IMG/VR virus record: IMGVR_UViG_3300042545_001134
Coordinates: 186,001-250,000 of that record
Length of the DNA stretch: 64,000 nt
Reading direction: 5' to 3' (one strand)
Part shown: positions 368 to 54,392 of the stretch, in pieces
How positions within the stretch are numbered: the first letter of the stretch is position 1
How the letters are laid out: each line of letters starts with the position of its first letter
Notes under the pieces: model-generated
The model's database searches: none
What the model saw: only the letters and a program-made list of their open reading frames with translations
Told to the model about the DNA's origin: nothing
Made by a program: the position numbers and the translations under genes

Positions 368-2533
368 TTAGAAGTCTAATCTTACTCCAAACACTTGTGT
401 GCCAATTCTTTTAATTGGTTTTGCGGTTTTAGCAATCACCATAACTTCCTTATTACTGTTCAATAAGGCAACTTCAGTAATTCTTTTATCCGCACCTGAT
501 GGGTAAGTAGGATTTTGTGTTGTTGTGAACTGAGATGATGGTAAGTTTACCATAAATGTCATTCTTTCTATGTCAGTTGCTCTAACCAATCTAATACTTC
601 CCGGAAATGGTTGTTCATCACCAAATTGTGGTAATCCAGGTTCGGTTAATGAATCAGATTCATTGGGAACTAAACCTAAATAACTTTCAATATCATATAA
701 TGTACCACTTGTATACATTGCGTTTGTAACTTTCATTGAAACATTAGTGATATCTAATGGGTCAATTAATTGTCCAACCGTATGTCCCGAAATGTGTGAT
801 GTGTAATTGATTCTTGTCCAGTTATCATGAATCGGTAGTTCACCTGTATCAGTAACTTGTACCAAAATTTGGAATTGGTTTGCGATGAATCCTGATGACG
901 CTCCTGAACACACGTTTGTGTTATTCATGAATGGGAAACTATCTTCTCCAAATTTAACAAATAATTGAGATGGGTTTTTTAAACATTCGTCACCATCAAA
1001 TACTTCAATTTTAGAATAATAATTACATGGTAATCCATTTAATTGTGTGTCACCTGTGTAATTGAACATGTATGTTACCCAAATAGTTTGTCCTGTTGTT
1101 GAACCTGTGAAGAATGATTCTCCTGTAGATGTGTCACTCGGAATTAAACTAATTTTAGGTGCTGGTAATGTGTATTTTCTATTTGATTTATAGTCAAGTA
1201 CCGCAATAAGTTCTTGGTCGTCAAAAACAATTGTTTTGTTGTTAACGTAAATCTTACCAACTTTATAACCTTGTTCATCTAACAAATATCTGAACAATAA
1301 TAATTGAGTTGGGTTAATACTTGATTTCATATAGTAATCGGTAGTATCCATTGTAAATAACGCACCAACTGTGGTTCCAGTATTTCTGTGATATTGAACA
1401 AACGGAATATAAACCTCAAAATATTCTAAATCGGTAATTGTGTTCTCATCGGCATCTTCCAATAACGCATCACCTTCAACATTATTTGTTGAGATGTAAT
1501 CATCGTACTTATAAAATCTTTCAGGGTCATTAACTAAATCTCCCAATTCTGAATAATGAATAATCGCAATTGTTCTTTGTTCTTCGGGAGAAACAATAAT
1601 TTTCTCGTCAAATGAATTGTAATAAGATGTAACACCCGTAATTGTTCCACCTGTACTGTTTACCCATGTTTGACCACTTGTTGTGGTATAACCTAAAAAT
1701 TGTTTTGTTGATACGTGTTTGTTACTTGTGAAACCAGTTAGATTTTCATCTAAACCATTAACATCAAATCCGGTTGGTTTTTTATCCCATACAATATTCA
1801 TTGTCCACGAATTTAATTGTTGTGATGGGTCGATATCATTTGGACTACAATACGGACTAATTCCCGCATCTATAGGATATTCATTTTCACACGAATTACA
1901 AATAACCTGAACATTACCCGAACATCCTGAGAAGTTAGGTAAATTTCTATCCACCGTGATTGTGTTTCCACTTACACTGATTACTTGATAAATTAAACTT
2001 GACGCTTGTCCTGTGATAACAGGATAGTTAGGGTCGGTACCTCCGAACTGATTGAAAACCACCGTAATATATTCACAGTCACTAAAACTTGAACCTGTTG
2101 GTACAATTATACTTGTTGTTCCTGTAATTCCCGATAATGGGATTGATTGTGTTGTACATTGGATTGTTGTTCCTGTACATGCAACACTATCATATTCTTC
2201 GTAATTACTAACGAATCCCGCAGGTCCCATTACATTTCTTAAAATGTCAGTTACTGACATATCAATAGGAATACCATACGTTGTTGAGGTATCAGATGAA
2301 TCTATTTTATATGGGTATTTTACCCCACCTTCTTTATCAAATGGTGAGAATACTGATTGGTGTTGAACACCACCTAAACCCGTTAATCCTGTGAATGGAT
2401 TTGTGTAATCAAACTCAGAATCCCCAATTTGGAAATATGATATTACAAAATTTCCTTTGGCAATAGAATTTCTTCCCTTTTGGGTTATTCTTGCTGATAG
2501 GAACTCCGAATTATTTTTACTTAGAAAACTCAT
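368..2533 (-). CDS. baseplate / tail-fibre attachment structural protein (tail-collar-like N- and C-terminal motifs around a large insertion)
   Basis: 721 aa. N-term ITQKGRNSIAKG..ISYFQIGD and C-term ITEVALLN...VIAK resemble the two halves of the P2 gpH-type tail-collar (DUF3751-like) domain. Late motif at 2538-2545. Confidence 0.5.
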   Translation of the reverse strand: MSFLSKNNSEFLSARITQKGRNSIAKGNFVISYFQIGDSEFDYTNPFTGLTGLGGVQHQSVFSPFDKEGGVKYPYKIDSSDTSTTYGIPIDMSVTDILRNVMGPAGFVSNYEEYDSVACTGTTIQCTTQSIPLSGITGTTSIIVPTGSSFSDCEYITVVFNQFGGTDPNYPVITGQASSLIYQVISVSGNTITVDRNLPNFSGCSGNVQVICNSCENEYPIDAGISPYCSPNDIDPSQQLNSWTMNIVWDKKPTGFDVNGLDENLTGFTSNKHVSTKQFLGYTTTSGQTWVNSTGGTITGVTSYYNSFDEKIIVSPEEQRTIAIIHYSELGDLVNDPERFYKYDDYISTNNVEGDALLEDADENTITDLEYFEVYIPFVQYHRNTGTTVGALFTMDTTDYYMKSSINPTQLLLFRYLLDEQGYKVGKIYVNNKTIVFDDQELIAVLDYKSNRKYTLPAPKISLIPSDTSTGESFFTGSTTGQTIWVTYMFNYTGDTQLNGLPCNYYSKIEVFDGDECLKNPSQLFVKFGEDSFPFMNNTNVCSGASSGFIANQFQILVQVTDTGELPIHDNWTRINYTSHISGHTVGQLIDPLDITNVSMKVTNAMYTSGTLYDIESYLGLVPNESDSLTEPGLPQFGDEQPFPGSIRLVRATDIERMTFMVNLPSSQFTTTQNPTYPSGADKRITEVALLNSNKEVMVIAKTAKPIKRIGTQVFGVRLDF

Positions 2534-2561: not shown

Positions 2562-3461
2562 TTAACATCCACTACCTTTTAAACAATCTATATATAACAC
2601 CCCACTAAGTACATAATATAAATTCGGATATGAAGCGCCGGGATTAATTGCGTTGGTATCTGGGAAATATGTTGTCAGTCCCGCATCCGAGAAAACGATT
2701 GTTGAATCAACAAACGAATCACTTAAACCCATGTAAATTGTTGAGTTACCAATATTACCATTTAATTGGCAGGTCCCACCATTACATAGAGTATCACCTG
2801 TTTGAACTGTAAATTGTATATTAGATGATGTTGGTGTTGGGGTTGGGGTTATAGTTGAGGTGGTTGTAATAAATCCACCTTCAAGTGTACATCCAGTAGT
2901 AACTAAACTTATTGTTACTAAAGTACAATCTGTTGTTGGTAAAGAGCAAGAACATAAATCTAACACCGTTCCCATAGTGAATTGGGGGGTAGGTAATCCA
3001 AAATAATCACCCCGTTCGGACATCGGTGTGTTTGTGTTACAATCAGTCCAATTTATAAATTCTCCACAATAAGAAATATATGTAATTCTATACGTGTTAC
3101 ATTCACATACGGAAGATGTTGGTGTCGAGGTGGATGTTACCGTAGGAGTACTAGTTCCCGTAGGAGTTACTGTTGGGGTGGGCGTTGGTGTCGATACTAT
3201 ATCTCCACAACATTCATCTAAATTAACTCTAAATGTATTTGAACAACACCCTTCACAGTCAATTTTAACAAAAACTTCCATTAATGTTGCAGACAAACCT
3301 GTTAAGGTACATGTTGTCCCAGTTATATTTACACAATTAGTTGTCCCCGTAACCGTAGAGTCCGTTAGACCCGTATAAACAGTACAATTTGTGTAATCTG
3401 AACCCGAATTTAAATTAATTGTAACACCTTTTGGGGTTACTGTATCTGGAGTACATGCCAT
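2562..3461 (-). CDS. PT-linker, Cys-rich putative virion appendage/adhesin protein
   Basis: 299 aa. N-terminal beta domain, TPTPT linkers and Cys-rich modules; structural gene cluster; upstream TATTTATC. Confidence 0.55.
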   Translation of the reverse strand: MACTPDTVTPKGVTINLNSGSDYTNCTVYTGLTDSTVTGTTNCVNITGTTCTLTGLSATLMEVFVKIDCEGCCSNTFRVNLDECCGDIVSTPTPTPTVTPTGTSTPTVTSTSTPTSSVCECNTYRITYISYCGEFINWTDCNTNTPMSERGDYFGLPTPQFTMGTVLDLCSCSLPTTDCTLVTISLVTTGCTLEGGFITTTSTITPTPTPTSSNIQFTVQTGDTLCNGGTCQLNGNIGNSTIYMGLSDSFVDSTIVFSDAGLTTYFPDTNAINPGASYPNLYYVLSGVLYIDCLKGSGC

Positions 3462-3511
3462 TTAGTATCTAATATATCAGATAAATATTAGAAAGTAAAT
3501 TTTAAATGGTA

Positions 3512-4951
3512 TTAACTCATACAATCATTATCCACTGTACAGTTACTACCAGGTATTATCGTTGCAGTACTATACGACGGAGCACTTTGGATTCCTAATT
3601 TTAAAATGTAAATACTATTAATTACTTGTACACACGCAACATATGTTGCAGGAGAATTGTATTGGGTTATAATTTCCGTTCCGTCACATTTAATCATACT
3701 AACATAAACAATACCGTCATCTGATGCAATTAAATCTCTTTCATCGATGTAAATGTTCGCGCATTGACACTCAGTTAAACACGAGTATATTTCACCGTCA
3801 AATACACATGCGTTTCCTGTATTTGTAATTATTAAATTAGGTTGGTCTAAATTGACTATATTACCACAAAGATTTATGGTTGTTGAGCCCGAAATTGAGT
3901 CTACAAATAACACACCGTTACAATCTTCATATGTTACCGAACATCCTTCCGGATTCGAACATTCAACAGTGTAACAATTACATGGTCTTGATTCTGTAGG
4001 TGTAGGTGTTGATTGTTCCGTTGTCGTCGCCGTTGGAGTACTAGTTCCCGTAGGAGTTGCTGTAGGTGTATTAGTTCCTGTAGGAGTTAAAGTAGGTGTA
4101 CTAGTTCCTGTTGGAGTTAAAGTAGGGGTCGGTGTTATTGTTGGTGTCGCCGTAGGGGTTAATGTAGGTGTTGGTGTTGGTTCACCCGTTACAATACAAT
4201 CACCATCTATAGTACATGGGTTTAATGTATTAGTATATGTTGAAAACTCAATCGGAACGATATCAGACTCTTCCGGTCCATTATATCTATACCAATCTGT
4301 TATTGAGGATATGCAATATCCTGAAAATCCCCCAACACCACTAAATCCTATACTTTGAGGTGTTAAACTACAATCTAAATATTGAAGTATTGGCCCTCCG
4401 TATTCTCCAAATTCACGTTCATCAATATTGAATTCATAACAATAACATCCTTCTGCCGGTGTTGGTGTTATGGTACTGGTTCCTGTTGGAGTTCCTGTAG
4501 GGGTTGCCGTAGGTGTACTAGTTCCTGTGGGGGTCACAGTGGGAGTTGGGGTTATTGTTGGTGTTGGTGTAACATCAGTACTAGTTGTTGTGGGTGTTGG
4601 TGTTACCGTTGGTGTGTTAGTCCCCGTGGGGGTTGGTGTTGGGATTATTTGTGAAATACAATCGTCACATCTTAAATCAACAAAAACCAATTGATAACCA
4701 CCTTGTAATTTAGGTGTTGACGTTGGCACCGAGTTAATGTGTCCATCACAATGTTCAATAAATAAATAAACATTATCATATGAACTATCAACATTCAAAC
4801 TTAAAGTGTATCCCGAAACGGGTACGTTAACGTCTTCCACATAATCAGCGTCATCAATGTCGTGAGTTATTCCAGTATAAACTGAATAACTTTCACATGG
4901 TGTTGTACCATTAAAATTGGAAACTGTTATTTCATAACTTGAAGTTGGCAT
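3512..4951 (-). CDS. PT-linker, Cys-rich putative virion appendage/adhesin protein (three Cys modules)
   Basis: 479 aa. Two PT tracts of about 65-70 aa separate CYCY..YLDC, CNCY..YEDC and CQCA..MIKC modules. Confidence 0.55.
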   Translation of the reverse strand: MPTSSYEITVSNFNGTTPCESYSVYTGITHDIDDADYVEDVNVPVSGYTLSLNVDSSYDNVYLFIEHCDGHINSVPTSTPKLQGGYQLVFVDLRCDDCISQIIPTPTPTGTNTPTVTPTPTTTSTDVTPTPTITPTPTVTPTGTSTPTATPTGTPTGTSTITPTPAEGCYCYEFNIDEREFGEYGGPILQYLDCSLTPQSIGFSGVGGFSGYCISSITDWYRYNGPEESDIVPIEFSTYTNTLNPCTIDGDCIVTGEPTPTPTLTPTATPTITPTPTLTPTGTSTPTLTPTGTNTPTATPTGTSTPTATTTEQSTPTPTESRPCNCYTVECSNPEGCSVTYEDCNGVLFVDSISGSTTINLCGNIVNLDQPNLIITNTGNACVFDGEIYSCLTECQCANIYIDERDLIASDDGIVYVSMIKCDGTEIITQYNSPATYVACVQVINSIYILKLGIQSAPSYSTATIIPGSNCTVDNDCMS

Positions 4952-4986
4952 CTATATTAAATATGAATCTATTTTTTATTATTTTT

Positions 4987-6678
4987 TTAACAACAGCAAC
5001 CCACAGGTATACTTGTTCCACAACTTCCGCTTATTATGTCGTCCTCGGGACCGACGGTTTCACTTATTATTTTCCAAGCACAATTAGGATTTGGTAAACT
5101 ACTCATATTTACAAATGTCCCTATTGATAACGAAACAAGGGACTTCGCTATGTACGTTGGGCCGCTCGCTGCGCCCGTATCACAGTTACTTACTGCCCTA
5201 ATAAAATAGTAAAATTCCATAGGTGTTGAAGTTGGAGTTATTGTTGGTGTTGAAGTTGGGGTTGTTGTTATAGTTCCCGTTGATGTTGGAGTTATTGTTG
5301 GGGTTGTCGTTGATGTAGGTGTTACCGTTGGGGTTGGTGTTGCTCCAATTGAACCACATATCTCAACAATTTTAAATGTTGTTGTTTTGGGGTCGGACAC
5401 ATAAATTGTGTTTGTTGGTGGATAAAATACCACATCAAATGGTGTTGAATCCGGTATTGTTATTGTATCTGATAGTGTACCCGTTGATACATCAATAACT
5501 TTAACAACTCCACCATCAAAAATTGGGATGTATAATTTATTGTTTACACTGTTATATACAGAGTTATAAATCGTCAACCCAAGTGAAATACTATATGAAT
5601 TTGTAACACTATTTGTTGAACAATCGATTACATCATAACCCCCTGTATGGATTACAAATAATTGATTAGTTGATGATTTATATGATAATGAACGAACCGT
5701 TCCACTGACCGCAATACTCCCAACTATTGTATATGATATCGTAGAAAATCTTTGAACAGTTGTACCCGTACCCGGAAGATAAAGAGTATCGTTAATTGAG
5801 TTATAACTTAATGTATAACTCGTACTATTAATTGGTAAACCAGTAACTTGTGTAATAAATGTTTCAGAAGAACCATCTATTACCGATATTTCACCTGAAC
5901 TCGTTCCAGTATATGAGGAAAGATACATTACATTATCTCCCGAATTAAATTCAAACGCCTTTGGATTTGTTGGTCCATTTCCTAAATATGTTTCGGTTTG
6001 TGGAATTGTTGTATTTTGCATACGTATAGTGCCACCTACGTCAACCCCATAAACTTTATTTGTTACGGTATTCATACCTATAATAGATGTGTTTACACTG
6101 GTCGTAAATGTCCCAAATATGGATTGTGTTGATGAGTTTGGTATAACTCTACTAATGTAATATGCCGCACCAACGTTAAGTGCATAAATTTCATTATTAT
6201 TTGGGTTATACACCATACCGGAAGGTCTGTTATACACTGATGGACTGTTCAATGTTCTTACAATATCGTCACTACAAGTAGTTGATGTCGGGGTAGTTGT
6301 TATAGTTCCCGTTGATGTTGATGTTGGGGTTGTCGTTATGGTTGGAGTTGGAGTTATCGTTGGTGTAGGTGTTGATTGGTTTTCACATGTCACATCGATA
6401 CTAAAACAGATTGTGTCATAACATGGGAACGCCTTACTATCGTGAGTAAAGATATTTTGAACAATATATCTACCCGTTGCATTGTCCGTCATTTTAATCC
6501 AATACTGAGTATCGAATGTTAAACCTGAAATTGTTATTTCAGTTGTTGACGGAGTATATGAACCCAATAACGTAAAAGTTGAATTAGTTTCAACGGGGTA
6601 TGGATTATTACCCGACTTATAACGAATCGTGTAATTACCATTTGAGATTATATTATATATTCTTACGTTTAGTCCCAT
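4987..6678 (-). CDS. FN3-like N-domain + PT linker + YVTN/YncE-like beta-propeller + PT linker + Cys-rich C-domain
   Basis: 563 aa. TISGLTFDTQYWIKM is FN3-like. Repeats of about 42 aa (YNPNNNEIY, FNSGDNVMY, YNSINDTLY, YNSVNNKLY, with VIDG/VIDC/VIDV) are typical of YVTN propeller blades. Confidence 0.65.
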   Translation of the reverse strand: MGLNVRIYNIISNGNYTIRYKSGNNPYPVETNSTFTLLGSYTPSTTEITISGLTFDTQYWIKMTDNATGRYIVQNIFTHDSKAFPCYDTICFSIDVTCENQSTPTPTITPTPTITTTPTSTSTGTITTTPTSTTCSDDIVRTLNSPSVYNRPSGMVYNPNNNEIYALNVGAAYYISRVIPNSSTQSIFGTFTTSVNTSIIGMNTVTNKVYGVDVGGTIRMQNTTIPQTETYLGNGPTNPKAFEFNSGDNVMYLSSYTGTSSGEISVIDGSSETFITQVTGLPINSTSYTLSYNSINDTLYLPGTGTTVQRFSTISYTIVGSIAVSGTVRSLSYKSSTNQLFVIHTGGYDVIDCSTNSVTNSYSISLGLTIYNSVYNSVNNKLYIPIFDGGVVKVIDVSTGTLSDTITIPDSTPFDVVFYPPTNTIYVSDPKTTTFKIVEICGSIGATPTPTVTPTSTTTPTITPTSTGTITTTPTSTPTITPTSTPMEFYYFIRAVSNCDTGAASGPTYIAKSLVSLSIGTFVNMSSLPNPNCAWKIISETVGPEDDIISGSCGTSIPVGCCC

Positions 6679-6682
6679 TTAA

Positions 6683-7708
6683 TTATAATTGACAATTTTC
6701 TTGACATGCATTCGTACACACGCCATGACCTGTTGTTCCGTAAAGTATTAAGTTAGGTCCACCACTTATAGTGTTACCTGTAATTTTAAAAATACTTCCA
6801 GTACACGCCCCAACATTTTCAATGTAGAATCTACCAAATACAGGAGACGTTGATGTTGGCATCTCAACAATTACGTTATCATTTATCATTGTACATCCTG
6901 TTGCTACTCCTCCTGAATCGTATTCACATGACCATTCTTCCGCCTCATATGCGGATGTTCCTATTGGTTCAGGTGTGAATGTAGGTGTAACAGTTATTGT
7001 TGGTGTTGATGTTGGTGTATTAGTACCCGTTGGTGTTGATGTTGGTGTATTAGTACCTGTCGGTGTTGGAGTTTCCATTGGTGTAATCGTTTCACATTCC
7101 CCTAGTTGTGTTATGTTACCCTCACCTCCGGTTTGAAATACTGAACCATTTTGAGCACAAACAACTATTGCACTTGTTACTGTTGCAGAATTTGGTGTTC
7201 CATCACACTCTAACCATTCAACATCAATAGATGCGGCACCTTCGATGTTATAACCATAACAAAATAGGATTGGTGTTTCTGTTGGTGTTACCACTGTTGG
7301 TGTGTTAGTACTTGTTGGTGTCGTAGTAGGTGTTGTTGTCGGCGTTTCAGTTGGGGTATTAGTTCCTGTTGGTGTGGGGGTAATGGTTTCCGTTGGTGTT
7401 CCCGTAGGAGTACTAGTTCCCGTTGGTGTTACTGTAGGAGTACTAGTTCCCGTTGGTGTTACAGTAGGTGTTGGTGTGGTAGAACTAATAACATAATTAA
7501 CTTCATTTGTACATAATCCAACACTAGCAACTGTTCCACTTACAATTGTGTATGGTGTGGTGTCAACAGTATAACCCGTTAATAATTGAGATTTTGTGAT
7601 ACCTGTTGCTAAAAGAACAACATCAAACGTATCGGTTAATCCCGAAATATTAAATGGTCCCGCATCTGTTGCGGTATATCCTGATGGTATTGTAAATGTT
7701 ATAAACAT
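6683..7708 (-). CDS. PT-linker, Cys-rich putative virion appendage protein
   Basis: 341 aa with the same architecture as its neighbours; TATTTATA at 7728-7735. Confidence 0.55.
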   Translation of the reverse strand: MFITFTIPSGYTATDAGPFNISGLTDTFDVVLLATGITKSQLLTGYTVDTTPYTIVSGTVASVGLCTNEVNYVISSTTPTPTVTPTGTSTPTVTPTGTSTPTGTPTETITPTPTGTNTPTETPTTTPTTTPTSTNTPTVVTPTETPILFCYGYNIEGAASIDVEWLECDGTPNSATVTSAIVVCAQNGSVFQTGGEGNITQLGECETITPMETPTPTGTNTPTSTPTGTNTPTSTPTITVTPTFTPEPIGTSAYEAEEWSCEYDSGGVATGCTMINDNVIVEMPTSTSPVFGRFYIENVGACTGSIFKITGNTISGGPNLILYGTTGHGVCTNACQENCQL

Positions 7709-26282: not shown

Positions 26283-26283
26283 A

Positions 26284-26733
26284 TTATATGTTAATAATTA
26301 TAAAGTCTGACGAACTAAATGGTTCATTATTAATGTCGTAATCGATTCTAACCTTGGCAGTGTATGGTTTTGTTGAATTATCTGATACTCTAAATAATCT
26401 TTCATCATCTTGTTCACTCACACTTGAAGGTTGCTCGGGGTCCATATCCGCAGGGGTTATTCTAATTGATTTAATATCCAAATTAGGTATGTACTTCTTT
26501 ACTGTGGTTCTTATCTCATCTTCAATAAGTTGAAACGTAACTGCATCATTTGGTTCAAAGATGAACTCATATAATCTTGTCCCAAAATCGGGCATATAAT
26601 ATCTAGTACCCCTTCTGGTTAAAATTAAATGAATCAAATTTGCTCTAATTTCCCTTTCAGGTATTTCCGTCATGTTCAGGAAACTACCTTTTGAACTTTG
26701 TCTAAATGGGAAGTCTATACCATATGTCGCCAT
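26284..26733 (-). CDS. baseplate wedge / sheath initiator (T4 gp25 / GPW-like)
   Basis: IRANLIHLILTRRGTRYYMPDFGTRLYEFIFEP signature. Start moved to MATYGID (26733) because the late motif sits at 26737-26744. Confidence 0.88.
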   Translation of the reverse strand: MATYGIDFPFRQSSKGSFLNMTEIPEREIRANLIHLILTRRGTRYYMPDFGTRLYEFIFEPNDAVTFQLIEDEIRTTVKKYIPNLDIKSIRITPADMDPEQPSSVSEQDDERLFRVSDNSTKPYTAKVRIDYDINNEPFSSSDFIIINI

Positions 26734-26766
26734 ACAAATAAATATAAACAATATAAGAATACTAGT

Positions 26767-34256: not shown

Positions 34257-34279
34257 ATTAATAATATAAGTTTTTTTTT

Positions 34280-34325: not shown

Positions 34326-34336
34326 GGGGGGTTAGA

Positions 34337-42679: not shown

Positions 42680-42992
42680 AATATAAATTATACAATTCTA
42701 CACTTCTTTTGTAATCTTGTAAAGTCGTAGTTAAAGGAAATGGTACTCTAATTAACGAATTGTTCGGAATTTCAAACTCTAAACTACCGGCCAATGGATT
42801 TGCCATTAAAATAACCCAACCAAAAACGGGTGAATTATAATATTCTTGAGAGATTTTATCCAATCTATCTTTTCCTTTCTTATAGAATGTATACTTGTCG
42901 GTTCCTTTAATCGGAATCTCAATACCCGGAACAATTTTAAATTCACTGTCCTCAATGAAAAACTGATATCTGTTAAAATAATCCCTTGCCAT
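42669..42992 (-). CDS. LysM-like baseplate protein (T4 gp53 / P2 gpX-like)
   Basis: DRLDKISQEYYNSPVFGWVILMANP...IRVP. Confidence 0.8.
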   Translation of the reverse strand: MARDYFNRYQFFIEDSEFKIVPGIEIPIKGTDKYTFYKKGKDRLDKISQEYYNSPVFGWVILMANPLAGSLEFEIPNNSLIRVPFPLTTTLQDYKRSVELYNLYYGE

Positions 42993-47840: not shown

Positions 47841-49757
47841 TTATGATTGACTAGTATAATCTCTTGGACTAGTTCCATTTAAAAATTCGTCAATTGCTTC
47901 GGGTCTTCTAACAAGATATCTTGACCATTCATCCATAATCGTATCACTCTTAATATTAAGTGTAACTTCTGTTTTATTGGATTGTGGTTCAGTTGTTGTT
48001 GCCGGTGTATTTGTTGTCGGTGTTGAATTGTTAACAGGTACTGATTGTTGTGGTGTTGATTTAGAACCATACATTCCAACGTCAGTTGCCATTTTAATTG
48101 TTTTGTCCACCACGTCAATATTTGCGTTTTTTGCACCAGTTTTTGAACTCTCGTTCATTTCTTTCGCAGTTTTTGAAAGGTAATCTGAGACACCTTTTGT
48201 TTCCGCATCAATGGCAGCACCTGCAATTCTCGCTTCACGAGCAAATCTAACTCTCAAAATACCTAAAATTTCAGCGACATTCAACGCCATATTTTGAGTT
48301 TGAGTAAATTGTTCTTTTGCGATTTGTTCAGTTGACATTTCTTCAAATGCCTTTTGATTTGCCAATAATGCATCCGCTTCAACTTTGGTTAGAGTATCTA
48401 AAGCAATTCTCTGAGCTCCACCAAATTCTTTTGATATAGAGGAAACGTCAATAACCATTTTACCACCTTCCATTCTTGAGATGTTGGTTAAGAATTCTTT
48501 CTCTTTTTCATCTAACGCAAATCCTTTTGACATAAGAGCAGTTGATGCGGACTGTCTTTCGGATGCCTTAATAGAAGTTTTACTTAATTCTTCCATTGTC
48601 ATTCCGAATTGCTCAGCCATCGCTTTTGCCTTTCTTAAATTAACTCCTGTTATTTCAAAACGACCTTGTTCTTGGTTGTAAGTTGCTAATGAACCTGCAG
48701 CGCCTATTATTGCATCCTGTATTCCTCCAACATCATTTGTTGCGTTATACATCATTTTAAGTGGGTCGTTAAAATCACCAATTGCACCACCTATTGCTTG
48801 TAAATTTGCCGTTAAATCAATTGCTTGGTCTGGGTCAAATAATTTTTCAGCCAAATCAAAGGTATTCTGCATGTTAAATTTGAATTGAACTGATTGTTGA
48901 ACCATTTTGGTTAAACCTTGAACCCCATTTTGAAAACCGTATTGGTTTATTTTAGATAAATTCGTATTTACCTCAGATACAACCTTTCTAGAGTTTAAAC
49001 CTAAAACCATAGATGATTTACCCGCCTCGTTAATTTGTTCTAACGCATCTCCCGCTCCTATACCAATTTCATTGAAGTTGTTTAGATATTGTGGAAGGTC
49101 CTGTAAGTTACCAATGAACGCTCTTGATGTAACCGCCCCCTTTTCAAAAACATCAGCACCAACCATCGCCATATTACCCATGTCTTGTGACACTTGCATG
49201 GTAGTTGACGCTAATTCATCGAAACTATATCCCATACCTGCAACCGCGGGCATGGCTTCAAAAATATTATCCCTATAATCTCTCGATAGTTGGCCCGCCA
49301 TTCCTAATTTGGCGTTTACTTCGTTTCTTAATTTAACTTCGTTAGTAAGAACGTCCGTTATTTGTTTACCGGCAAATTCTAAGGATTTAAAAATTGAGTC
49401 ACCGAGTAATGAGGTTATACCTCCACCCAGACCACCTCTAATTGTTTTTACAATATCAGTAACCTCAAGTTTTTCATTATCAGCCAATGACGCTGAAGCG
49501 GGTAGACTTTGAGAACCAGCTAATCTTTCAACAAAATCGCCACCTGTTTTTGATGCGGCTTTACCAAAACTATATTTATCGCCACCACTATTAGAACCAG
49601 TACCCCGACCAATAAAACCTTGGGCAAATTGAGACTGCTCGCTACTTGACAATGGATTACCTCCATTTAATTTTTTAGCATATGCCTCCGATTGAGTATC
49701 AGAATGATTTAACTTTCTTGAGTCTTCACCTACTTTTTTCCAATCAATTGTTGCCAT
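47841..49757 (-). CDS. tape measure protein
   Basis: 638 aa, helical and Ala/Gly/Gln-rich; canonical position after tube and chaperone, before tube initiator. Confidence 0.7.
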   Translation of the reverse strand: MATIDWKKVGEDSRKLNHSDTQSEAYAKKLNGGNPLSSSEQSQFAQGFIGRGTGSNSGGDKYSFGKAASKTGGDFVERLAGSQSLPASASLADNEKLEVTDIVKTIRGGLGGGITSLLGDSIFKSLEFAGKQITDVLTNEVKLRNEVNAKLGMAGQLSRDYRDNIFEAMPAVAGMGYSFDELASTTMQVSQDMGNMAMVGADVFEKGAVTSRAFIGNLQDLPQYLNNFNEIGIGAGDALEQINEAGKSSMVLGLNSRKVVSEVNTNLSKINQYGFQNGVQGLTKMVQQSVQFKFNMQNTFDLAEKLFDPDQAIDLTANLQAIGGAIGDFNDPLKMMYNATNDVGGIQDAIIGAAGSLATYNQEQGRFEITGVNLRKAKAMAEQFGMTMEELSKTSIKASERQSASTALMSKGFALDEKEKEFLTNISRMEGGKMVIDVSSISKEFGGAQRIALDTLTKVEADALLANQKAFEEMSTEQIAKEQFTQTQNMALNVAEILGILRVRFAREARIAGAAIDAETKGVSDYLSKTAKEMNESSKTGAKNANIDVVDKTIKMATDVGMYGSKSTPQQSVPVNNSTPTTNTPATTTEPQSNKTEVTLNIKSDTIMDEWSRYLVRRPEAIDEFLNGTSPRDYTSQS

Positions 49758-49770
49758 ACCTATAAATAGA

Positions 49771-49923
49771 TTAATTTGTATTTTCTATATCCATAAGATA
49801 CTTTATATAGTATCTTCGAACATAGATAGGCATACCCATAATATCCCCATAAGAGAACCCTCTTTTGACTAAAAATAAAATTTCGTCTAACTGACCTTTC
49901 TTATAATCCGTAGAAAGGGCGAA
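49771..49923 (-). CDS. frameshift-accessed C-terminal extension of the tail assembly chaperone (gp51 / gpT-like)
   Basis: +1 frame after GGG TTT TTT C reads FALSTDYKKGQLDEILFLVKRGFSYGDIMGMPIYVRRYYIKYLMDIENTN*; fills the gap up to the tape-measure promoter. Confidence 0.7.
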   Translation of the reverse strand, partial: FALSTDYKKGQLDEILFLVKRGFSYGDIMGMPIYVRRYYIKYLMDIENTN

Positions 49924-50650
49924 AAAACCCAACCCCGAACCCAATTTCAATTTGGGTAATATCTCCAGACGGGGTATTAATTGTTTGGGTTAAATTCACA
50001 CCCGGTTTATTTTCTTCTACAAACTTTCTAAAATCTTGAGAGTCTTTGATTGGTAATCTATCAACAAAATTGTGAGTATTCATTAAATCCTTATTTCCCT
50101 CAACGGATTTAATCATCATCTCAAGTTTTTTTGTGATGATAGGTGCAACCCCATTACCATTCCAACTTGTTTCAATATCTTTTAATTCTTTTTCTTGTTT
50201 TGAGGTCAAAAATTTAAAAGTAATATTAACCTTACTTTTTTCCATATGATATGGATATTCACCATTTGAATCCGCAACTAACGTAAAGTCTTTATATTTT
50301 AATTCACTTAAATCGATATCAACAGTAAACTCTTTTTCTGTTTTTGGGTCGATTGTTGTGTATTTGTATATTGAACCGAACGCGGTATTTCGTAAGAAAA
50401 TTAATATCGCCTGTTTATCTTCTTCACATAATTCATCAGTATTGAAGTCTTTATCTAAAACTTTTCTTTTGAGTAGTTCTTCGAGCATTTTATTACTTGC
50501 CAGTAAATTTGCCGATGATAGGATATTTTCATCAGATGCGGTTAAATACGCGATTCTTAATGATTTCTTACCACTTGGGTAATGAATACCTCTTGAAGGT
50601 AATTCTACAACATCATATGATATTGTTGGGTCGATTCTAAATTCTTCCAT
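49901..50650 (-). CDS. tail assembly chaperone / T4 gp26-like baseplate hub assembly protein
   Basis: VELPSRG..Y, LTASDENIL and DKQAILIFLRNTAFG; lies between tube and tape measure genes. Confidence 0.75.
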   Translation of the reverse strand: MEEFRIDPTISYDVVELPSRGIHYPSGKKSLRIAYLTASDENILSSANLLASNKMLEELLKRKVLDKDFNTDELCEEDKQAILIFLRNTAFGSIYKYTTIDPKTEKEFTVDIDLSELKYKDFTLVADSNGEYPYHMEKSKVNITFKFLTSKQEKELKDIETSWNGNGVAPIITKKLEMMIKSVEGNKDLMNTHNFVDRLPIKDSQDFRKFVEENKPGVNLTQTINTPSGDITQIEIGFGVGFFRPFYGL

Positions 50651-50693
50651 AAATGTGTTTTATTATAACTATACTATTATACAAAACTTATTA

Positions 50694-50727
50694 TAAAAAG
50701 TAAAGGTCTCCCTTGTGAGGAGACCTT
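50694..50727 (-). terminator. intrinsic terminator after the tail tube gene
   Basis: 9-bp stem AAGGUCUCC/GGAGACCUU followed by UACUUUUU. Confidence 0.7.
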
Positions 50728-50759
50728 CATATTGACAGATTCTATATTTTTTATTTCTA

Positions 50760-51248
50760 TTAGTAAACTTGGATACATCTATCCATACGTAAAGACGCAG
50801 TGATAGTTGCGATATCGTCTCTTGAGTAATCAAGTTCATTGAAGTTCAAGTCAGTCAAGAATGTACCTTGAAGAATCCATTTTTCAACCACAACACCCGT
50901 TGGGTCTAACATCTCCAATTCGATGTCTTTCTTATAACCCGCAGCGTAACCCATACGACCCGTAACAGACTCAGCGTGAAGACGGAACCATTCCATCAAT
51001 GCCTGTGACGCAGAAGGACCAATAGGGTCTTTAAACGTTACTCTTAATTCGTTCCACTCAAAACGTCCCGCAACATAAGTTGAGGTATTGATGAACGGAA
51101 TCGCAACTGAATTGATTTTTGCACTTGGTCTAGCCGCTGATGACACATACCATTCGTTGATACCCAATGAAGAAGGGAATCTAAGTATGAATCGGTTAAC
51201 TCTTTTCGGTTCGTAAGGAACCGGCATTTTCATTAATAAATCTGCCAT
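50760..51248 (-). CDS. tail tube protein (T4 gp19-like)
   Basis: EPKRVNRF, YVAGRFEWNEL.VTF.DP, LMEW and GYKKDIELEMLDPTG.VVEKW; follows the sheath gene. Confidence 0.9.
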   Translation of the reverse strand: MADLLMKMPVPYEPKRVNRFILRFPSSLGINEWYVSSAARPSAKINSVAIPFINTSTYVAGRFEWNELRVTFKDPIGPSASQALMEWFRLHAESVTGRMGYAAGYKKDIELEMLDPTGVVVEKWILQGTFLTDLNFNELDYSRDDIATITASLRMDRCIQVY

Positions 51249-51554: not shown

Positions 51555-54392
51555 TTAGATATTATCAAATGATGCTCCTGTTGGGGTAATTATGAACTCA
51601 ACATCGATAAATTCAAGTGAACGAGTTGGTTTTACATAGATTTTACCTCTAAGTGTGTTTGCATCAATGTCCTCAGGGTCATTAGATACAGTTACACGGA
51701 ACTCATATAAACCTCTTTCTCTCTTAATTGCTTCAAGAATTGGGTTTACTAATCTCAAGAATTCATTACGAACTTGTTCGTCATTTTGTTCGAACAACAA
51801 TCTTACAGCAACTGCTGAAATAAGTTTTCTTGCTCTTAACAATAATCTTCTTACGTTAATTCTATCCAATGCAGATTCTCTTACTTGAAGGGTTTTGTTA
51901 CCCCAAATAATGGTACCTGTATCAGAGAAAGTAGCGATTGGGTTGATTCTTGCCTTATATAAATCATCTCTTTCGTCAAGAGTTAATTTTTTAACCGCTT
52001 TGATTGCCTTAACCAAACCTCTTGAATAACCCGCTACTGCGAACCAAGGGAATGATACGTTATCTGTTAACGCAATGTTTCTTACAACCTCACCTGTAGG
52101 TGGAATGTATAATTGAGTTGCGTTGTCTTGGTCTCTAACTTGAATCCAAGGCCAGTAGGTTGCTGAATAGTTAGTATCCAATGCCACACCGTCCAATGCG
52201 TCAATTACTTCGTCCGCAGTTGATACGTTTGGAGATGCAATAACATAAAGTGAATCCGCTCTATCGTTTTCCATAATATCGATTGCCTGTGTAGTTAATG
52301 AACTATGGTCGTAGAAGTTAATACCCGGAGTTGCGAAGATGTTGATATCTACCGCTTCAGGGTTTGCGAATGTGTTAATACCTTGTAGGTATGCATAATA
52401 ATCAGAGTTTCCAACAGTTGTACTGAATACACCACCGTTAGTTGTGTGACCACTTACATATGTTGATTTACCAAAGATATATCCGTCTCCGTAAGTTTTA
52501 GTTTGACGATAAATGTCAAAACCATCGAAACCACCACCAACTGCAAATGTGAATTTACGGTAAGTTGTTGCTGTTAATGGATTATCAACACCTGTTTGTC
52601 CTTCTAAATCGTAAGGAGTTGTTGTAAATGTTGTACCTGTAATAGTAGATGCGTTTACTGATAAGTGGAAACCACTTGTTGAACCCGCAGCCGCCGCTCC
52701 TTTATATTTGAATAAGTCTTTGTCAAGTCCAACTTGTGAAGATAGACCTAAAGTTACTTTTCTAATTTTATCACCGGCAGATGTAACTGGAGAACCATCA
52801 ACATTGTAACTGATAACATCACCTGCGGTGTAGTATTCCGTTTTATATAATACTGAACCCAAAACAGAACCTGAGAAGTTTGTGTTTGCTACAAATCCTT
52901 TAAATCCTGCTGGAAACGCATCAGTTGGGTGGTTTTCAGCCATATTCAACATGATGTATTTTGAACGTAATTCGTATTCACCGTCAGAAGTACCAACTTT
53001 CTTAGCCACATAACCTGGTAGGTCTGGATTCATTGAACATCTTGTAAATTTCTCAAGTGCAACTAAATTATCGTCAGTATCGTTAAAGTCACGAACAATT
53101 AAATCAAATTCACCTGTTTCGATATCGATATTGATGATAGACATTTTGATTTGTGCGTTCGCTGCGTCACCATCTGAAATTGTAATAGTCTCAAATAGGT
53201 CAGAAACCTCACCACCACGTACTTCAGATACTACCATTGGAGAAATTGGGGTATCCCACTCTCTAACGAAGTTTGTACCTTCAGAAACATAAAGTTCAGT
53301 TAAACTAATACCTCTTACTAAACCTTGTTCGTATGCGGTCTTTAAATAATTTGGATATGTTTCGTAAACATACACCGGAATGTCCGATTTAGGTTTGTCA
53401 TATACATCAGTACCTAACACTTTAGTTACATACTTAGATGATGATAAATCCATTGAACAAGTGAATGATTTTACACCACTTGTAGAACCCGTTACATTAA
53501 CTGTAAACTCGGCGAAAGGATTTGTTGACAAATCAGAACCTGAAATGTTGAAACTTGTGTTACCTGTAACTTCAAGTAACAATGTTTGTCCTGAATAAGA
53601 ACCTCTTGAACGGAACGCCGCAACAACTTCACCGTCATTGGTTAATGTTGCATCGTACTCATATCTTGTTACTGAGAATAGGTTAGTTGAACCATTCCAT
53701 ACGAATAAATAAGAATAAACCTCATTTGTACCGTTATTGAATGTGTTGTACCAATTTTTATTCCAAGATGAATTTACATTTAGGTCACCTGTAAGTGGTG
53801 AAATCATTTCTTTAGTTGGGTCTTGAGCTGCAACATCTGTTGCATCCGCCGCACCAATAACGAACCATGTACCTGTACCACCTGTGAAACCACTAAATTC
53901 TGTGTAGATGTAATCTGTAATAGATGTACCATCATATGCAGTTTTACCCGAAAGTTCAGCGTATACTGTACTTCCTGTGTAAGTTGCTAATGGTGTTGGG
54001 TCCATTGTGATACCTGTTGTGGTACCTGTTGTCATACTCCCCAAAACAAAACCACCAAGGGTTTGAATTGCGAAAGTTTTCACTGGTTTATATCCTGTTA
54101 ACCCTAGGATTCTTGTTACGAATAATTGATTCGATTCTTCAAGGTATGCTTTAGCAACATAAGGTAACTCATATTTTGGGTTACCCGCCCCGTCTTTTGC
54201 TGGTGATGAACCTCCAAAGTACAATTTAAACTCATCATAATCTTTAACTAAGATTGGTTCGAAGGCTGGACCCTTTAAGGTTTCACCTACCAAACCTAAT
54301 GTAGTAACACCTACACTTTGTGCGACGAATGTTAAATCTTTTTCTGATGTATAAACACCTGGAGATACAAATACTCTATTTGAATTTGCCAT
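51555..54392 (-). CDS. contractile tail sheath protein (T4 gp18-like)
   Basis: VSPGVYTSEKD, GETLKGPAFEP, YSATYWPW, PWFAVAGYSRG, INPIATF, IIWGNKTLQ..SALDRINVRRL and KPTRSLEFI. Confidence 0.96.
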   Translation of the reverse strand: MANSNRVFVSPGVYTSEKDLTFVAQSVGVTTLGLVGETLKGPAFEPILVKDYDEFKLYFGGSSPAKDGAGNPKYELPYVAKAYLEESNQLFVTRILGLTGYKPVKTFAIQTLGGFVLGSMTTGTTTGITMDPTPLATYTGSTVYAELSGKTAYDGTSITDYIYTEFSGFTGGTGTWFVIGAADATDVAAQDPTKEMISPLTGDLNVNSSWNKNWYNTFNNGTNEVYSYLFVWNGSTNLFSVTRYEYDATLTNDGEVVAAFRSRGSYSGQTLLLEVTGNTSFNISGSDLSTNPFAEFTVNVTGSTSGVKSFTCSMDLSSSKYVTKVLGTDVYDKPKSDIPVYVYETYPNYLKTAYEQGLVRGISLTELYVSEGTNFVREWDTPISPMVVSEVRGGEVSDLFETITISDGDAANAQIKMSIINIDIETGEFDLIVRDFNDTDDNLVALEKFTRCSMNPDLPGYVAKKVGTSDGEYELRSKYIMLNMAENHPTDAFPAGFKGFVANTNFSGSVLGSVLYKTEYYTAGDVISYNVDGSPVTSAGDKIRKVTLGLSSQVGLDKDLFKYKGAAAAGSTSGFHLSVNASTITGTTFTTTPYDLEGQTGVDNPLTATTYRKFTFAVGGGFDGFDIYRQTKTYGDGYIFGKSTYVSGHTTNGGVFSTTVGNSDYYAYLQGINTFANPEAVDINIFATPGINFYDHSSLTTQAIDIMENDRADSLYVIASPNVSTADEVIDALDGVALDTNYSATYWPWIQVRDQDNATQLYIPPTGEVVRNIALTDNVSFPWFAVAGYSRGLVKAIKAVKKLTLDERDDLYKARINPIATFSDTGTIIWGNKTLQVRESALDRINVRRLLLRARKLISAVAVRLLFEQNDEQVRNEFLRLVNPILEAIKRERGLYEFRVTVSNDPEDIDANTLRGKIYVKPTRSLEFIDVEFIITPTGASFDNI

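What the first reader, a model, noticed from the sequence alone, without database searches (positions are those of the whole stretch)
368..54392. Virion-surface-restricted [S/T]-G-x-T motif: candidate phage-wide modification (glycosylation) sequon
Seen (approximate counts by eye): [S/T]GxT occurs about 14 times in the 721-aa protein (roughly 1-2 expected from composition), about 15 in the non-repeat 1440 aa of the 2703-aa protein, about 9 in the 368-aa, 5 in the 286-aa, 11 in the 580-aa, 9 in the hub, 6 in the 1602-aa protein and 11 in the sheath. Copies are often back-to-back (SGITGTT, TGSTTGQT, TGTTSGST, TGATSGFT, SGFTGGT). It is essentially absent from the enzymes (0 in NrdA and SNF2, 1 in Pol, only Walker A in DnaB/RecA) and from interior structural proteins (tube, tape measure, gp6-like, neck). 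Inference: recurrence in many unrelated folds looks like a selected recognition signal for a modifying enzyme, such as a phage glycosyltransferase coating the virion, or a docking motif for a decoration protein. It differs from the known Bacteroidota O-glycosylation motif D-[S/T]-[A/I/L/V/M/T].
Basis: partly seen in the sequence, partly recalled or inferred. Interest (0 to 1): 0.85.

Follow-up and report, generated by a model that had tools for sequence, protein, structure and literature searches.

The report
Surface-protein [S/T]-G-x-T motif in jumbo phage
The outward-facing virion proteins of this uncultured freshwater jumbo phage and its relatives carry the four-residue word [S/T]-G-x-T seven to fourteen times more often than chance, which looks like a selected tag, possibly a site where sugars are attached, but no modification has been shown.

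Summary
In eight non-T-rich virion proteins [S/T]G.T occurs 70 times against 9.7 expected (z about 22). Same-composition permutations reach only 1-2.9x. TG.T and SG.T are the two most over-represented of 48,000 three-residue patterns in the window.

Local composition, a DNA-level signal, paralogous domains and a generic beta-turn habit do not explain it. Eight other myoviruses give 0.8-1.8x.

The enrichment is confined to sheath outer domains, peripheral baseplate proteins and fibres. Outside the window it extends to a 702-aa protein and the major capsid protein. Enzymes, tube, gp6/gp25-like and neck proteins show none.

Homologs down to about 50% identity keep about 9 sites per protein while the sites move. 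More distant lineages keep 2.6-6.7x.

Two glycosyltransferase genes lie 10-16 kb beyond the window's right end. One, a GT2, is conserved across the clade and was not found in 50,697 deposited phage genomes.

The motif sits at strand-to-loop junctions with the position-1 hydroxyl facing outward. A modification sequon is my leading reading (about 0.4). An unmodified structural idiom remains a serious rival (about 0.3). Only mass spectrometry or co-expression can decide.

The parts
368..2533 (-). 721-aa protein (probable fibre or peripheral virion protein): 14 motif sites, including the tandems SGITGTT (2114-2134) and TGSTTGQT (1085-1108)
   Evidence: 14 vs 1.19 expected, z = 12. Sites listed, tandem coordinates. 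No Pfam, PHROG or PDB relative.
2562..3461 (-). 299-aa Thr/Cys-rich fibre-module protein with PT linkers: 5 sites
   Evidence: 5 vs 1.25 after masking the PT linkers, z = 3.7.
3512..4951 (-). 479-aa Thr-rich protein (phrog_15511): 3 sites
   Evidence: 3 vs 0.46 with PT linkers masked. PHROG hit.
4987..6678 (-). 563-aa Thr-rich protein: 3 sites, not significantly enriched
   Evidence: 3 vs 1.6 with PT linkers masked, z = 1.1.
6683..7708 (-). 341-aa Thr-rich protein (phrog_15511): 6 sites
   Evidence: 6 vs 0.73 with PT linkers masked, z = 6.3.
7751..15862 (-). 2703-aa giant fibre-like protein: 16 sites in its globular parts. It also has about 800 aa of (T-P-T-x)n linkers, which do not match the motif.
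   Evidence: 16 vs 1.97 in 1899 unmasked residues, z = 10. Sequence viewed.
16805..17911 (-). 368-aa baseplate-periphery protein: 9 sites, including the tandem TGATSGFT (17006-17029)
   Evidence: 9 vs 1.0. Homologs at 45-94% identity keep 6-11 sites.
17911..18771 (-). 286-aa baseplate-periphery protein: 5 sites, including the tandem TGTTSGST (18268-18291)
   Evidence: 5 vs 0.27. Homologs keep 2-5 sites against 0.1-0.8 expected.
18773..20515 (-). 580-aa baseplate-periphery protein: 11 sites. This is the best-studied family here.
   Evidence: 11 vs 0.55. 132 homologs average 9.1 +/- 1.7 sites spread over 45 alignment columns. In the confident part of the AF2 model the sites lie at strand/loop junctions.
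20515..24396 (-). 1293-aa baseplate protein: 5 sites (moderate enrichment)
   Evidence: 5 vs 1.67. Homologs have 1-8 sites.
36836..42679 (-).
   Evidence: 9 vs 1.56, z = 6.
42992..47800 (-). 1602-aa protein: 6 sites, 5 of them clustered in residues 780-855
   Evidence: 6 vs 1.44. The cluster is poorly conserved; site 1450 is kept in 16 of 18 homologs.
51555..54392 (-). Tail sheath (945 aa): 11 sites, 10 of them in the non-conserved outer part (residues 101-624). Tandems at 54006-54029 and 53874-53894.
   Evidence: Outer part 10 vs 1.5; core 625-945 1 vs 0.21. The core aligns to T4 gp18 residues 300-653. 62 homologs have 7-14 sites against about 1.5 expected.
24450..26751 (-). Negative set: gp6-like wedge (610 aa) and gp25-like (155 aa), 0 sites
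   Evidence: All gp6-like homologs also have 0.
47841..51248 (-). Negative set: 638-aa protein (tape-measure position), 249-aa T4_baseplate-family protein and 162-aa tail tube, 0 sites
   Evidence: Homologs of the 638-aa protein have 0-1 sites.

Best explanation
[S/T]-G-x-T is a lineage-wide, selectively maintained surface tag on the external virion proteins of this jumbo myovirus group: sheath outer domains, peripheral baseplate proteins, fibres, and more weakly the major capsid protein. It sits where a beta-strand ends and a loop begins. The residue before it is hydrophobic and so faces inward. The position-1 Ser/Thr hydroxyl therefore faces outward, and charged residues and proline are excluded nearby.

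My most likely mechanism is that the tetrapeptide is a recognition sequon for a phage-encoded cytoplasmic modifying enzyme. The most plausible case is O-glycosylation of the position-1 hydroxyl. Candidate enzymes are the clade-specific GT2 (259 aa) and/or the GT-B-like 405-aa glycosyltransferase encoded 10-16 kb to the right of the window. The result would be a glycan coat on the particle.

Shown: the enrichment, its order-specificity, its restriction to external proteins, its lineage-specificity, site turnover with maintained density, and the presence and conservation of the GT genes.

Inferred: that any modification occurs, which enzyme does it, and which residue is the acceptor.
For: 1. A specific, cooperative three-position word with a free x. 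[ST]G.T is at 7.2x, while [^ST]G.T is 1.1x, [ST]G.[^ST] 0.8x, [ST]G.S 1.6x, and N/D/A-G.T about 1x. It is the top word of 48,000 patterns and survives 6-residue block shuffles.
2. It is a protein-level signal. Ser is encoded by TCG, AGT and TCA, and Thr by ACA, ACG and ACT. The NCG bias is a general [ST]-Gly codon-context effect.
3. The motif-rich proteins show no detectable homology to each other: no hhalign pair above 20% probability and no BLAST hit with E < 0.08.
4. 103 of the 109 sites lie in 13 external-type proteins (12,127 aa). Six lie in the other 23 ORFs (8,333 aa), two of them Walker A loops. Outside the window, a 702-aa protein has 12 vs 1.9, the MCP 4 vs 0.55, and 12 non-structural ORFs have 0.
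5. It is not generic. T4, SP-15, Mel-JY01, S-SCSM2R, NCTB, LR756508, Flavobacterium phage immuto and phi92 give 0.8-1.8x.
6. Density is kept while sites move. The 580-aa family has 9.1 +/- 1.7 sites per sequence over 45 columns, with S/T swaps at position 1. In distant lineages the load shifts to other proteins of the same module: the L193 580-homolog has 0 sites and the neighbouring fibre has 12.
7. Sites are at strand-to-loop junctions. Proline is excluded at x and +1, and charged residues are excluded from -3 to +4.
8. Two GT genes sit next to structural genes. The GT2 is conserved at 66-100% identity in at least 191 clade contigs and gave no hit in 50,697 deposited phage genomes.
9. GT genes embedded among structural genes are the arrangement noted in Cluster O mycobacteriophages (PMC4351075). 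Virion glycosylation in mycobacteriophages is cited in PMC12619734.
10. The fibres carry long mucin-like PT linkers.
Against: - There is no direct evidence of any modification.
- Motif residues are conserved no better than other S, T or G residues of the same proteins.
- A parsimony count of motif gains was only 2-4x the controls in the 580-aa family and was not elevated in the sheath family.
- The flanks (T at -2, hydrophobic at -1 and +1/+4) are what an ordinary beta-strand/turn/beta-strand element looks like.
- Phage GTs more often modify DNA or host polysaccharide.
- The 405-aa GT has homologs in phi92-like phages, whose structural proteins are not enriched.
- Non-virion proteins show no avoidance of the motif: 6 vs 4.3-4.6.
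- Both AF2 models are of low overall confidence (pLDDT 55 and 39).
Confidence: 0.4

Rival explanations
1. Unmodified structural idiom. In this phage lineage T/S-G-x-T is simply the preferred way to close or start outward-facing beta-hairpins and loops. Gly takes the turn conformation and the two hydroxyl residues cap the strands. Selection for stability or solubility of exposed beta-sandwich surfaces spreads it convergently, with no enzyme involved.
For: - AF2 DSSP places the sites at strand ends or turns. For example, 580-aa S217-G-G-T220 is a two-residue hairpin, and sheath S267-G-Q-T270 and T301-G-S-T304 are strand-turn-strand.
- The alternating hydrophobic/polar flanks are typical of beta-strands.
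- Spacings of 9-20 residues are about 2x enriched, as in beta-meanders.
- Other phages' structural blocks show a small baseline excess of 1-1.8x.
- Per-site conservation is like background.
Against: - Seven to fourteen-fold enrichment in non-homologous folds of one lineage, against 1-1.8x in eight other myoviruses, has no structural precedent that I know of.
- Distant homologs of the same fold need far fewer sites: 1.5 against 9 per protein.
- The classical turn formers N-G and D-G flanked by T are not enriched.
- x is nearly unconstrained, including L, I, F and Y.
- Back-to-back copies (6 vs 1.8 expected) cannot both be two-residue turns.
- The modelled contexts are heterogeneous: a 2:2 hairpin, 3-residue loops and a 9-residue loop.
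- Excluding charge around an exposed turn is unusual.
Confidence: 0.3
2. A recognition signal for something other than a glycosyltransferase. Possibilities are another post-translational modification (phosphorylation, methylation, acylation), a phage or host chaperone or assembly factor, or a docking site for a decoration protein.
For: This rests on the same evidence of a selected, lineage-specific, surface-restricted linear word. Relatives described as 'moraphages' encode DnaK/DnaJ-type chaperones (PMC12619734). A host-dependent methylation of a phage tail protein has been reported (PMC13445384, abstract seen).
Against: No kinase, methyltransferase for proteins, or decoration-protein gene was identified in the 64-kb window or in the roughly 40 kb of flanks annotated. 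More than 100 docking sites per genome on more than 13 different proteins is hard to reconcile with a stoichiometric decoration protein. Chaperone motifs are usually hydrophobic or basic.
Confidence: 0.12
3. A ligand-binding micro-motif. The Thr/Ser-Gly-x-Thr loops would form small hydroxyl-rich 'nests' on the particle surface. These would bind anions or phosphate, or polysaccharide, giving weak multivalent adhesion to host envelope or particles. The analogy is the flavodoxin phosphate loop [ST]-x-T-G-x-T.
For: With the enriched T at -2 (2.2-3.1x), the extended motif T-x-[ST]-G-x-T matches the flavodoxin FMN-phosphate loop signature (the signature is mentioned in PMC7084853, found). The motif is restricted to the surface, and acidic residues are depleted nearby.
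Against: The flavodoxin loop is strand-loop-helix, whereas here the motif is followed by a strand. Basic residues, which would help anion binding, are excluded as strongly as acidic ones. The motif also occurs on the sheath and capsid, which are not adhesion organelles.
Confidence: 0.08
4. An artefact: chance, local S/T/G-rich composition, a DNA-level signal, or paralogous repeats.
For: The proteins concerned are somewhat S/T/G-rich, and I defined the 'rich' set after seeing the counts.
Against: - z = 14-18 even with 6-50-residue block shuffles.
- Permutations of the same residues reach only 1-2.9x.
- In the unbiased scan over all non-T-rich ORFs of the window (rich and non-rich together) the motif is still the top word.
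- Several synonymous codon families are used.
- There is no homology among the proteins.
- The enrichment is reproduced in hundreds of homologs and in proteins outside the window.
Confidence: 0.01

Closest known systems
Mycobacteriophage virion O-glycosylation (Cluster O/Corndog, Che8 and others; PMC4351075, and Freeman et al. 2023 as cited in PMC12619734)
   Same: Phage-encoded glycosyltransferase genes sit among or next to virion structural genes. The proposed outcome is a glycan coat on capsid and tail proteins made in the host cytoplasm.
   Different: There the glycans are reported on the C-termini of the capsid and tail-tube subunits (PMC12619734); I know of no defined sequon. Here the tail tube has no site. 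The sites are internal, number more than 100 across more than 13 proteins, and form a defined tetrapeptide. No modification has been demonstrated here.
Bacteroidota general O-glycosylation sequon D-[S/T]-[A/I/L/V/M/T]
   Same: A short three-position O-glycosylation sequon used on many unrelated proteins. The predicted hosts of related jumbo phages are Flavobacteriia (PMC12619734).
   Different: That motif is not enriched here (27 vs 29.9 and 25 vs 26.7). To my knowledge that system acts in the periplasm, whereas virions assemble in the cytoplasm. The motif itself is different.
N-x-S/T sequons and viral 'glycan shields' (HIV Env, influenza HA; chlorovirus capsid glycans made by virus-encoded GTs at atypical sequons, PMC9614988 and PMC7019647)
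   Same: A short sequon with a free middle position, proline excluded at x and after the motif, restriction to exposed surfaces, and site positions that drift while the number is maintained.
   Different: N[^P][ST] is not enriched here (96 vs 91.5). The acceptor would be an O-linked Ser/Thr. The host is bacterial.
Two-residue beta-hairpin turns (type I'/II') and ST-turns
   Same: Gly at the first turn position, flanked by beta-branched or hydroxyl residues. Several modelled sites are strand-G-x-strand.
   Different: Generic turns are not lineage-specific and do not require S/T at i together with T at i+3. In eight other phages the same word is at 0.8-1.8x.
Flavodoxin FMN-phosphate loop [S/T]-x-T-G-x-T
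   Same: The extended motif T-x-[ST]-G-x-T is the same string.
   Different: The secondary-structure context differs (strand-loop-helix there, strand-loop-strand here). There is no flavodoxin fold and no Pfam hit.

Membership tests
Sequon-directed protein glycosylation (generic) | Short linear motif statistically over-represented on exposed proteins and specific in residue order | tested here: met
   7.2x, z = 22; permutations 1-2.9x; top word of 48,000 patterns.
Sequon-directed protein glycosylation (generic) | Covalent glycan on the motif's Ser/Thr | not testable with these tools
   Needs mass spectrometry or structures of virions or recombinant proteins.
Sequon-directed protein glycosylation (generic) | A cognate glycosyltransferase encoded by the phage or host and co-distributed with the motif | tested here: inconclusive
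   A GT2 (PF00535, 24.9 bits against a cut-off of 23.3) and a phrog_7162 GT (E = 1e-41) lie 10-16 kb right of the window. The GT2 is conserved in the clade and gave no hit in deposited phage genomes. Its acceptor is unknown, and co-distribution in the distant, weaker-motif lineages could not be tested because those contigs are short.
Bacteroidota O-glycosylation (D-[ST]-[AILVMT]) | Enrichment or use of D[ST][AILVMT] on the target proteins | tested here: not met
   27 vs 29.9 in motif-rich proteins; 25 vs 26.7 in the others.
N-glycosylation (N-x-S/T; PglB or NGT type) | Enrichment of N[^P][ST] on exposed proteins | tested here: not met
   96 vs 91.5.
Mycobacteriophage-type virion glycosylation | GT genes embedded in or adjacent to the virion structural gene block | tested here: met
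   Both GTs lie between the fibre genes (702 and 1434 aa) and the capsid gene, co-oriented with the motif-bearing 649-aa and 458-aa genes.
Mycobacteriophage-type virion glycosylation | Acceptor sites in the C-termini of the capsid and tail-tube subunits | tested here: not met
   The tube has 0 sites. The MCP sites are internal (residues 134, 202, 234, 410 of 576). Sites elsewhere are spread through the proteins.
Generic beta-turn / beta-rich structural protein habit | The same word equally common in beta-rich virion proteins of unrelated phages | tested here: not met
   0.8-1.8x in T4, SP-15, Mel-JY01, S-SCSM2R, NCTB, LR756508, immuto and phi92, against 9.3x in the window's baseplate/fibre block.
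Generic beta-turn / beta-rich structural protein habit | Sites occupy turns between beta-strands | tested here: inconclusive
   DSSP on the confident parts of two AF2 models puts the sites at strand ends, in 2-3-residue turns, or in longer loops.
Paralogous repeat domain shared by the proteins | Detectable sequence or profile homology between the motif-bearing proteins | tested here: not met
   No hhalign pair above 20% probability, no BLAST E < 0.08, and no shared Pfam or PHROG family.
Flavodoxin-type phosphate loop / Walker A | Strand-loop-helix context (flavodoxin) or G-x4-G-K-[ST] (Walker A) | tested here: not met
   The motif is followed by a strand-like flank. Only the DnaB and UvsX sites are Walker A loops.

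The most novel reading that the evidence does not exclude
An abundant group of freshwater jumbo phages uses its own cytoplasmic O-glycosyltransferase(s) to recognise a minimal linear sequon, [S/T]-G-x-T, at exposed strand-loop junctions. The enzymes place glycans at more than 100 sites on at least 13-16 different virion proteins (sheath, baseplate, fibres, capsid). This would be a sequon-programmed phage 'glycan shield', with site positions drifting while the load is maintained, as in enveloped animal viruses.
Probability: 0.3. Interest if true: 0.9.

Novelty: new variant of a known kind. Interest (0 to 1): 0.72.

Why it matters
If the motif is a sequon, it would be the first defined acceptor motif for phage virion glycosylation. 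Glycosites could then be predicted from sequence in a very abundant, uncultured group of lake phages. It would imply that tailed phages can evolve glycan shields with the same site-turnover dynamics as animal viruses. That bears on phage-host recognition, grazing or adsorption losses, and particle stability.

It would also identify a small cytoplasmic O-glycosyltransferase with a four-residue sequon, which would be a useful tool for glyco-engineering.

If instead it is an unmodified structural idiom, it is still unusual. It would be a lineage-specific 'dialect' of surface beta-turns imposed on unrelated folds, and that would need an evolutionary explanation.

Either way the signal is strong enough (z > 20, reproduced in hundreds of homologs) to make the question directly testable.

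Tried and rejected
- **Local composition.** Block shuffles of 6-50 residues still give z = 14-18.
- **DNA-level motif.** The sites use several synonymous Ser and Thr codon families. The NCG excess at position 1 is also seen at non-motif [ST]-Gly dipeptides (31% against 10%), so it is a codon-context effect.
- **Paralogy.** All-against-all BLAST and hhalign found nothing.
- **Known sequons.** D[ST][AILVMT] and N-x-[ST] are not enriched.
- **Family or structure assignment of the motif-rich proteins.** There were no Pfam, PHROG or PDB sequence hits. Foldseek of the 580-aa model against PDB gave nothing with E < 0.05.
- **AF2 of the sheath.** With 30 close homologs the model was poor (pLDDT 39.5).
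- **Per-site conservation and substitution spectra.** Neither showed extra constraint at motif positions.
- **Parsimony gain/loss counts.** Only weakly informative, and dependent on midpoint rooting.
- **Linking the 405-aa GT to the motif through phi92-like phages.** These carry a 27%-identical GT but show only 1.78x, so if a GT is involved the clade-specific GT2 is the better candidate.
- **Literature.** Searches for TGXT or SGXT motifs found nothing relevant. Freeman et al. 2023 is not held in the library.
- **Membership in the published 'moraphage' lineage.** This could not be verified from the paper's identifiers.
Full report
**Setting**

The window is part of an uncultured jumbo myovirus. 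It is 100% identical to IMG/VR contig IMGVR_UViG_3300042545_001134 (310,691 bp). By coordinate arithmetic, window position 1 corresponds to about contig position 186,004.

Nearly all large genes are on the minus strand. PHROG and Pfam annotation gives the following:
- tail sheath: 51555-54392
- tail tube: 50760-51248
- T4_baseplate-family protein: 49901-50650
- gp25-like: 26284-26751
- gp6-like wedge: 24450-26282
- gp13-like neck: 59467-60585
- an inserted replication block (NrdA/B, DnaB, exonuclease, UvsX/RecA-like, SSB), plus an SNF2-type helicase and a B-family polymerase

The motif-rich proteins have no Pfam, PHROG or PDB relatives. The closest cultured relative by sheath is Microcystis phage Mel-JY01, at 32% identity. 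The clade is very abundant in metagenomes: the sheath has at least 592 IMG/VR relatives and the 580-aa protein has 1051 homologs.

Yes.

- In the eight non-T-rich motif-bearing proteins, [ST]G.T occurs 70 times against 9.7 expected from composition (z = 22).
- The signal is order-specific. Fourteen of the 15 same-composition permutations give 1-2.9x; the exception, TG.[ST], reaches 5.4x because it contains the motif's own TG.T sites.
- Each position matters. [^ST]G.T is 1.1x, [ST]G.[^ST] 0.8x, [ST]G.S 1.6x, [ST]A/N/D/S/P.T 0.7-1.8x, and N/D/A-G.T about 1x.
- Shuffling only within blocks of 6-50 residues still leaves 70 against 11-17.
- In an unbiased scan of 6 x 8000 three-residue patterns over all non-T-rich ORFs, TG.T (P = 3e-22) and SG.T (P = 8e-11) rank first and second. 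The next patterns are just the motif with its flanks.
- In the five Thr-rich fibre-module proteins the enrichment is hidden by long PT linkers. With these masked, the 2703-aa protein has 16 against 2.0, the 341-aa protein 6 against 0.73, and the 299-aa protein 5 against 1.25.
- Overall, 103 of 109 sites lie in 13 external-type proteins. Six lie in the other 23 ORFs, and two of those are Walker A loops.

**What it is not**

- It is not a DNA word. Position 1 uses TCG, AGT, TCA, ACA, ACG and ACT. The excess of NCG codons is shared by non-motif [ST]-Gly dipeptides.
- It is not paralogy. All-against-all BLAST and hhalign on family alignments found no relationship among the proteins.
- It is not a general property of beta-rich phage proteins. 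The structural regions of T4, Bacillus SP-15, Mel-JY01, Synechococcus S-SCSM2R, phage NCTB, the 484-kb LR756508 phage, Flavobacterium phage immuto and phi92 give 0.8-1.8x.
- It is not a known sequon. D[ST][AILVMT] and N-x-[ST] are at expectation.

**Distribution in the particle**

The sheath core (residues 625-945) aligns to T4 gp18 residues 300-653. It has 1 site against 0.21 expected. The non-conserved part, residues 101-624, has 10 against 1.5. From what I recall of the T4 gp18 structures, the corresponding domains are the protruding ones; I did not test this here.

The tube, gp25-like, gp6-like, neck, 638-aa and 431-aa proteins have none, and neither do any of their homologs.

I walked along the same genome with the look-up of encoding contigs:
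- To the right of the window lie a 702-aa protein (12 against 1.9) and a Laminin_G_3 fibre (7 against 3.8).
- Further right are a 649-aa protein (4 against 0.37), a 458-aa protein (3 against 0.53) and the gp23-like major capsid protein (4 against 0.55).
- Twelve non-structural ORFs to the left of the window have none.

**Evolution**

The density is a clade property.
- 132 homologs of the 580-aa protein (37-98% identity) carry 9.1 +/- 1.7 sites against about 0.65 expected. These are spread over 45 alignment columns. Four columns are near-fixed, about 16 are polymorphic and the rest are rare.
- Position 1 swaps freely between S and T, x varies, and position 4 stays T.
- Sheath homologs carry 7-14 sites and 368-aa homologs 6-11.
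- Homologs of the 580-aa protein at 26-35% identity have only about 1.5 sites, which is 4x.
- In three such distant lineages the syntenic baseplate/fibre block still shows 2.6x, 6.7x and 4.7x, carried by different proteins. In L193 the 580-homolog has 0 sites and the adjacent fibre has 12. The window's block is at 9.3x.

The pressure therefore acts on the genome's external proteins rather than on a particular fold.

Two results work against a simple selection story. Motif residues are not conserved better than other S, T or G residues. A parsimony count of gains is only modestly above controls.

**Anatomy of a site**

From 988 distinct contexts:
- Position -1 is hydrophobic in 68% of cases.
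- T is 2.2x at -2.
- Positions -3 and -1 are hydrophobic and -2 is polar. By strand alternation this puts the position-1 hydroxyl on the outward face.
- Proline is excluded at x and +1.
- K, R, D and E are strongly depleted from -3 to +4.
- x is otherwise nearly free.

In the confident part of the 580-aa AF2 model (residues 150-290, pLDDT 68-90), the five sites sit at strand ends, in two- or three-residue turns, or in a longer loop just before a strand. The moderately confident part of the sheath model shows the same pattern.

Both models are weak overall and no coordinates were available, so I could not compute exposure.

Back-to-back copies are about 3x more frequent than under random placement (6 against 1.8).

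**Candidate enzymes**

There is no glycosyltransferase in the window. Two lie just outside it, between the fibre genes and the capsid gene:
- A 405-aa protein matches PHROG 7162 'glycosyltransferase' (E = 1e-41) and weakly matches Glyco_transf_4.
- A 259-aa protein passes the Pfam Glycos_transf_2 cut-off. It has an invariant E-x-D-D-E stretch where a DxD-type motif is expected.

The GT2 maps to about window-equivalent 79.5 kb. It is conserved at 66-100% identity in at least 191 IMG/VR contigs, including the large contigs that carry the sheath homologs. It has no tblastn match in 50,697 deposited phage genomes.

The 405-aa GT has 27%-identical homologs in phi92-like coliphages. Their structural proteins are not enriched. 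If a GT is involved, the GT2 is therefore the better candidate.

A published lineage of freshwater jumbo phages with predicted Flavobacteriia hosts ('moraphages') has four core GT orthogroups (PMC12619734). I could not verify whether this phage belongs to that lineage.

GT genes lying inside the structural operon were noted in Cluster O mycobacteriophages (PMC4351075).

**Interpretation**

The data establish a selected, lineage-specific, surface-restricted tetrapeptide. They do not establish what reads it.

I rank the readings as follows:
- A modification sequon, with O-glycosylation of position 1 the most likely form: about 0.4.
- An unmodified structural idiom: about 0.3.
- Another recognition function: about 0.12.
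- A ligand-binding micro-motif resembling the flavodoxin phosphate loop: about 0.08.
- Artefact: about 0.01.

Four things favour the sequon over the structural idiom:
- the sequon-like grammar (a strict three positions, a free x, proline exclusion, S/T equivalence at one position only);
- the independence from fold;
- the redistribution of sites among proteins in different lineages;
- the neighbouring clade-specific GT.

Against it stand the beta-strand-like flanks, the background-level per-site conservation and the complete lack of chemical evidence.

The decisive experiments are co-expression with mass spectrometry and open-modification searches of lake viral metaproteomes.

Noticed in passing
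window 7751-15862 (especially about 8900-11600), also 2562-7708: The 2703-aa protein contains about 800 aa of near-perfect (T-P-T-x)n linker in several blocks, separating Cys-rich globular modules. This region raises GC to 0.446 against about 0.34 elsewhere, with strong GC and AT skew. Shorter PT linkers recur in the 299-, 341-, 479- and 563-aa proteins, two of which match phrog_15511. From what I know of secreted bacterial enzymes, such linkers are typically O-glycosylated. The plus-strand ORFs at 9522-10241 and 11070-11681 lie within or beside this repeat region on the opposite strand and are probably spurious.
   Followed up: partly
window 26896-35182: A block of replication and nucleotide-metabolism genes (NrdA, NrdB, DnaB-like helicase, exonuclease, UvsX/RecA-like, SSB) is inserted between the baseplate wedge genes and the 1947-aa/1602-aa/tube/sheath genes. 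All are on the same strand.
   Followed up: no
L109:11504-12721 and L109:16824-17603 (same phage, about 10-16 kb right of the window end): Two glycosyltransferase genes flank dUTPase and PhoH, between the fibre genes and the gp23-like capsid gene: a 405-aa protein (phrog_7162) and a 259-aa GT2. The GT2 has no homolog in 50,697 deposited phage genomes but is conserved at 66-100% identity across the clade.
   Followed up: partly
all ORFs of the window: Codon-pair effect. Ser and Thr codons immediately before a Gly (GGN) codon end in G in 31-42% of cases, against 10% elsewhere. They end in C in 2-8% of cases, against 12%.
   Followed up: partly
L104:3254-7558 versus L105:3893-7558 (just right of the window): Otherwise near-identical genomes carry different versions of the Laminin_G_3 fibre gene (1434 aa against 1221 aa). 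This suggests a swappable receptor-binding cassette.
   Followed up: no
L107:9156-9972 versus L108:9073-9972 (equivalent to window 2562-3461): In one near-identical contig the 299-aa Thr/Cys-rich gene is called as two short ORFs (94 aa on the opposite strand and 153 aa). This is either a real disruption or an assembly error in the PT repeat.
   Followed up: no
L193, L194, L195 (distant relatives, GC 0.27-0.34): The syntenic baseplate/fibre block is recognisable down to about 30% identity of the 580-aa protein. The motif load sits on different proteins in different lineages.
   Followed up: partly
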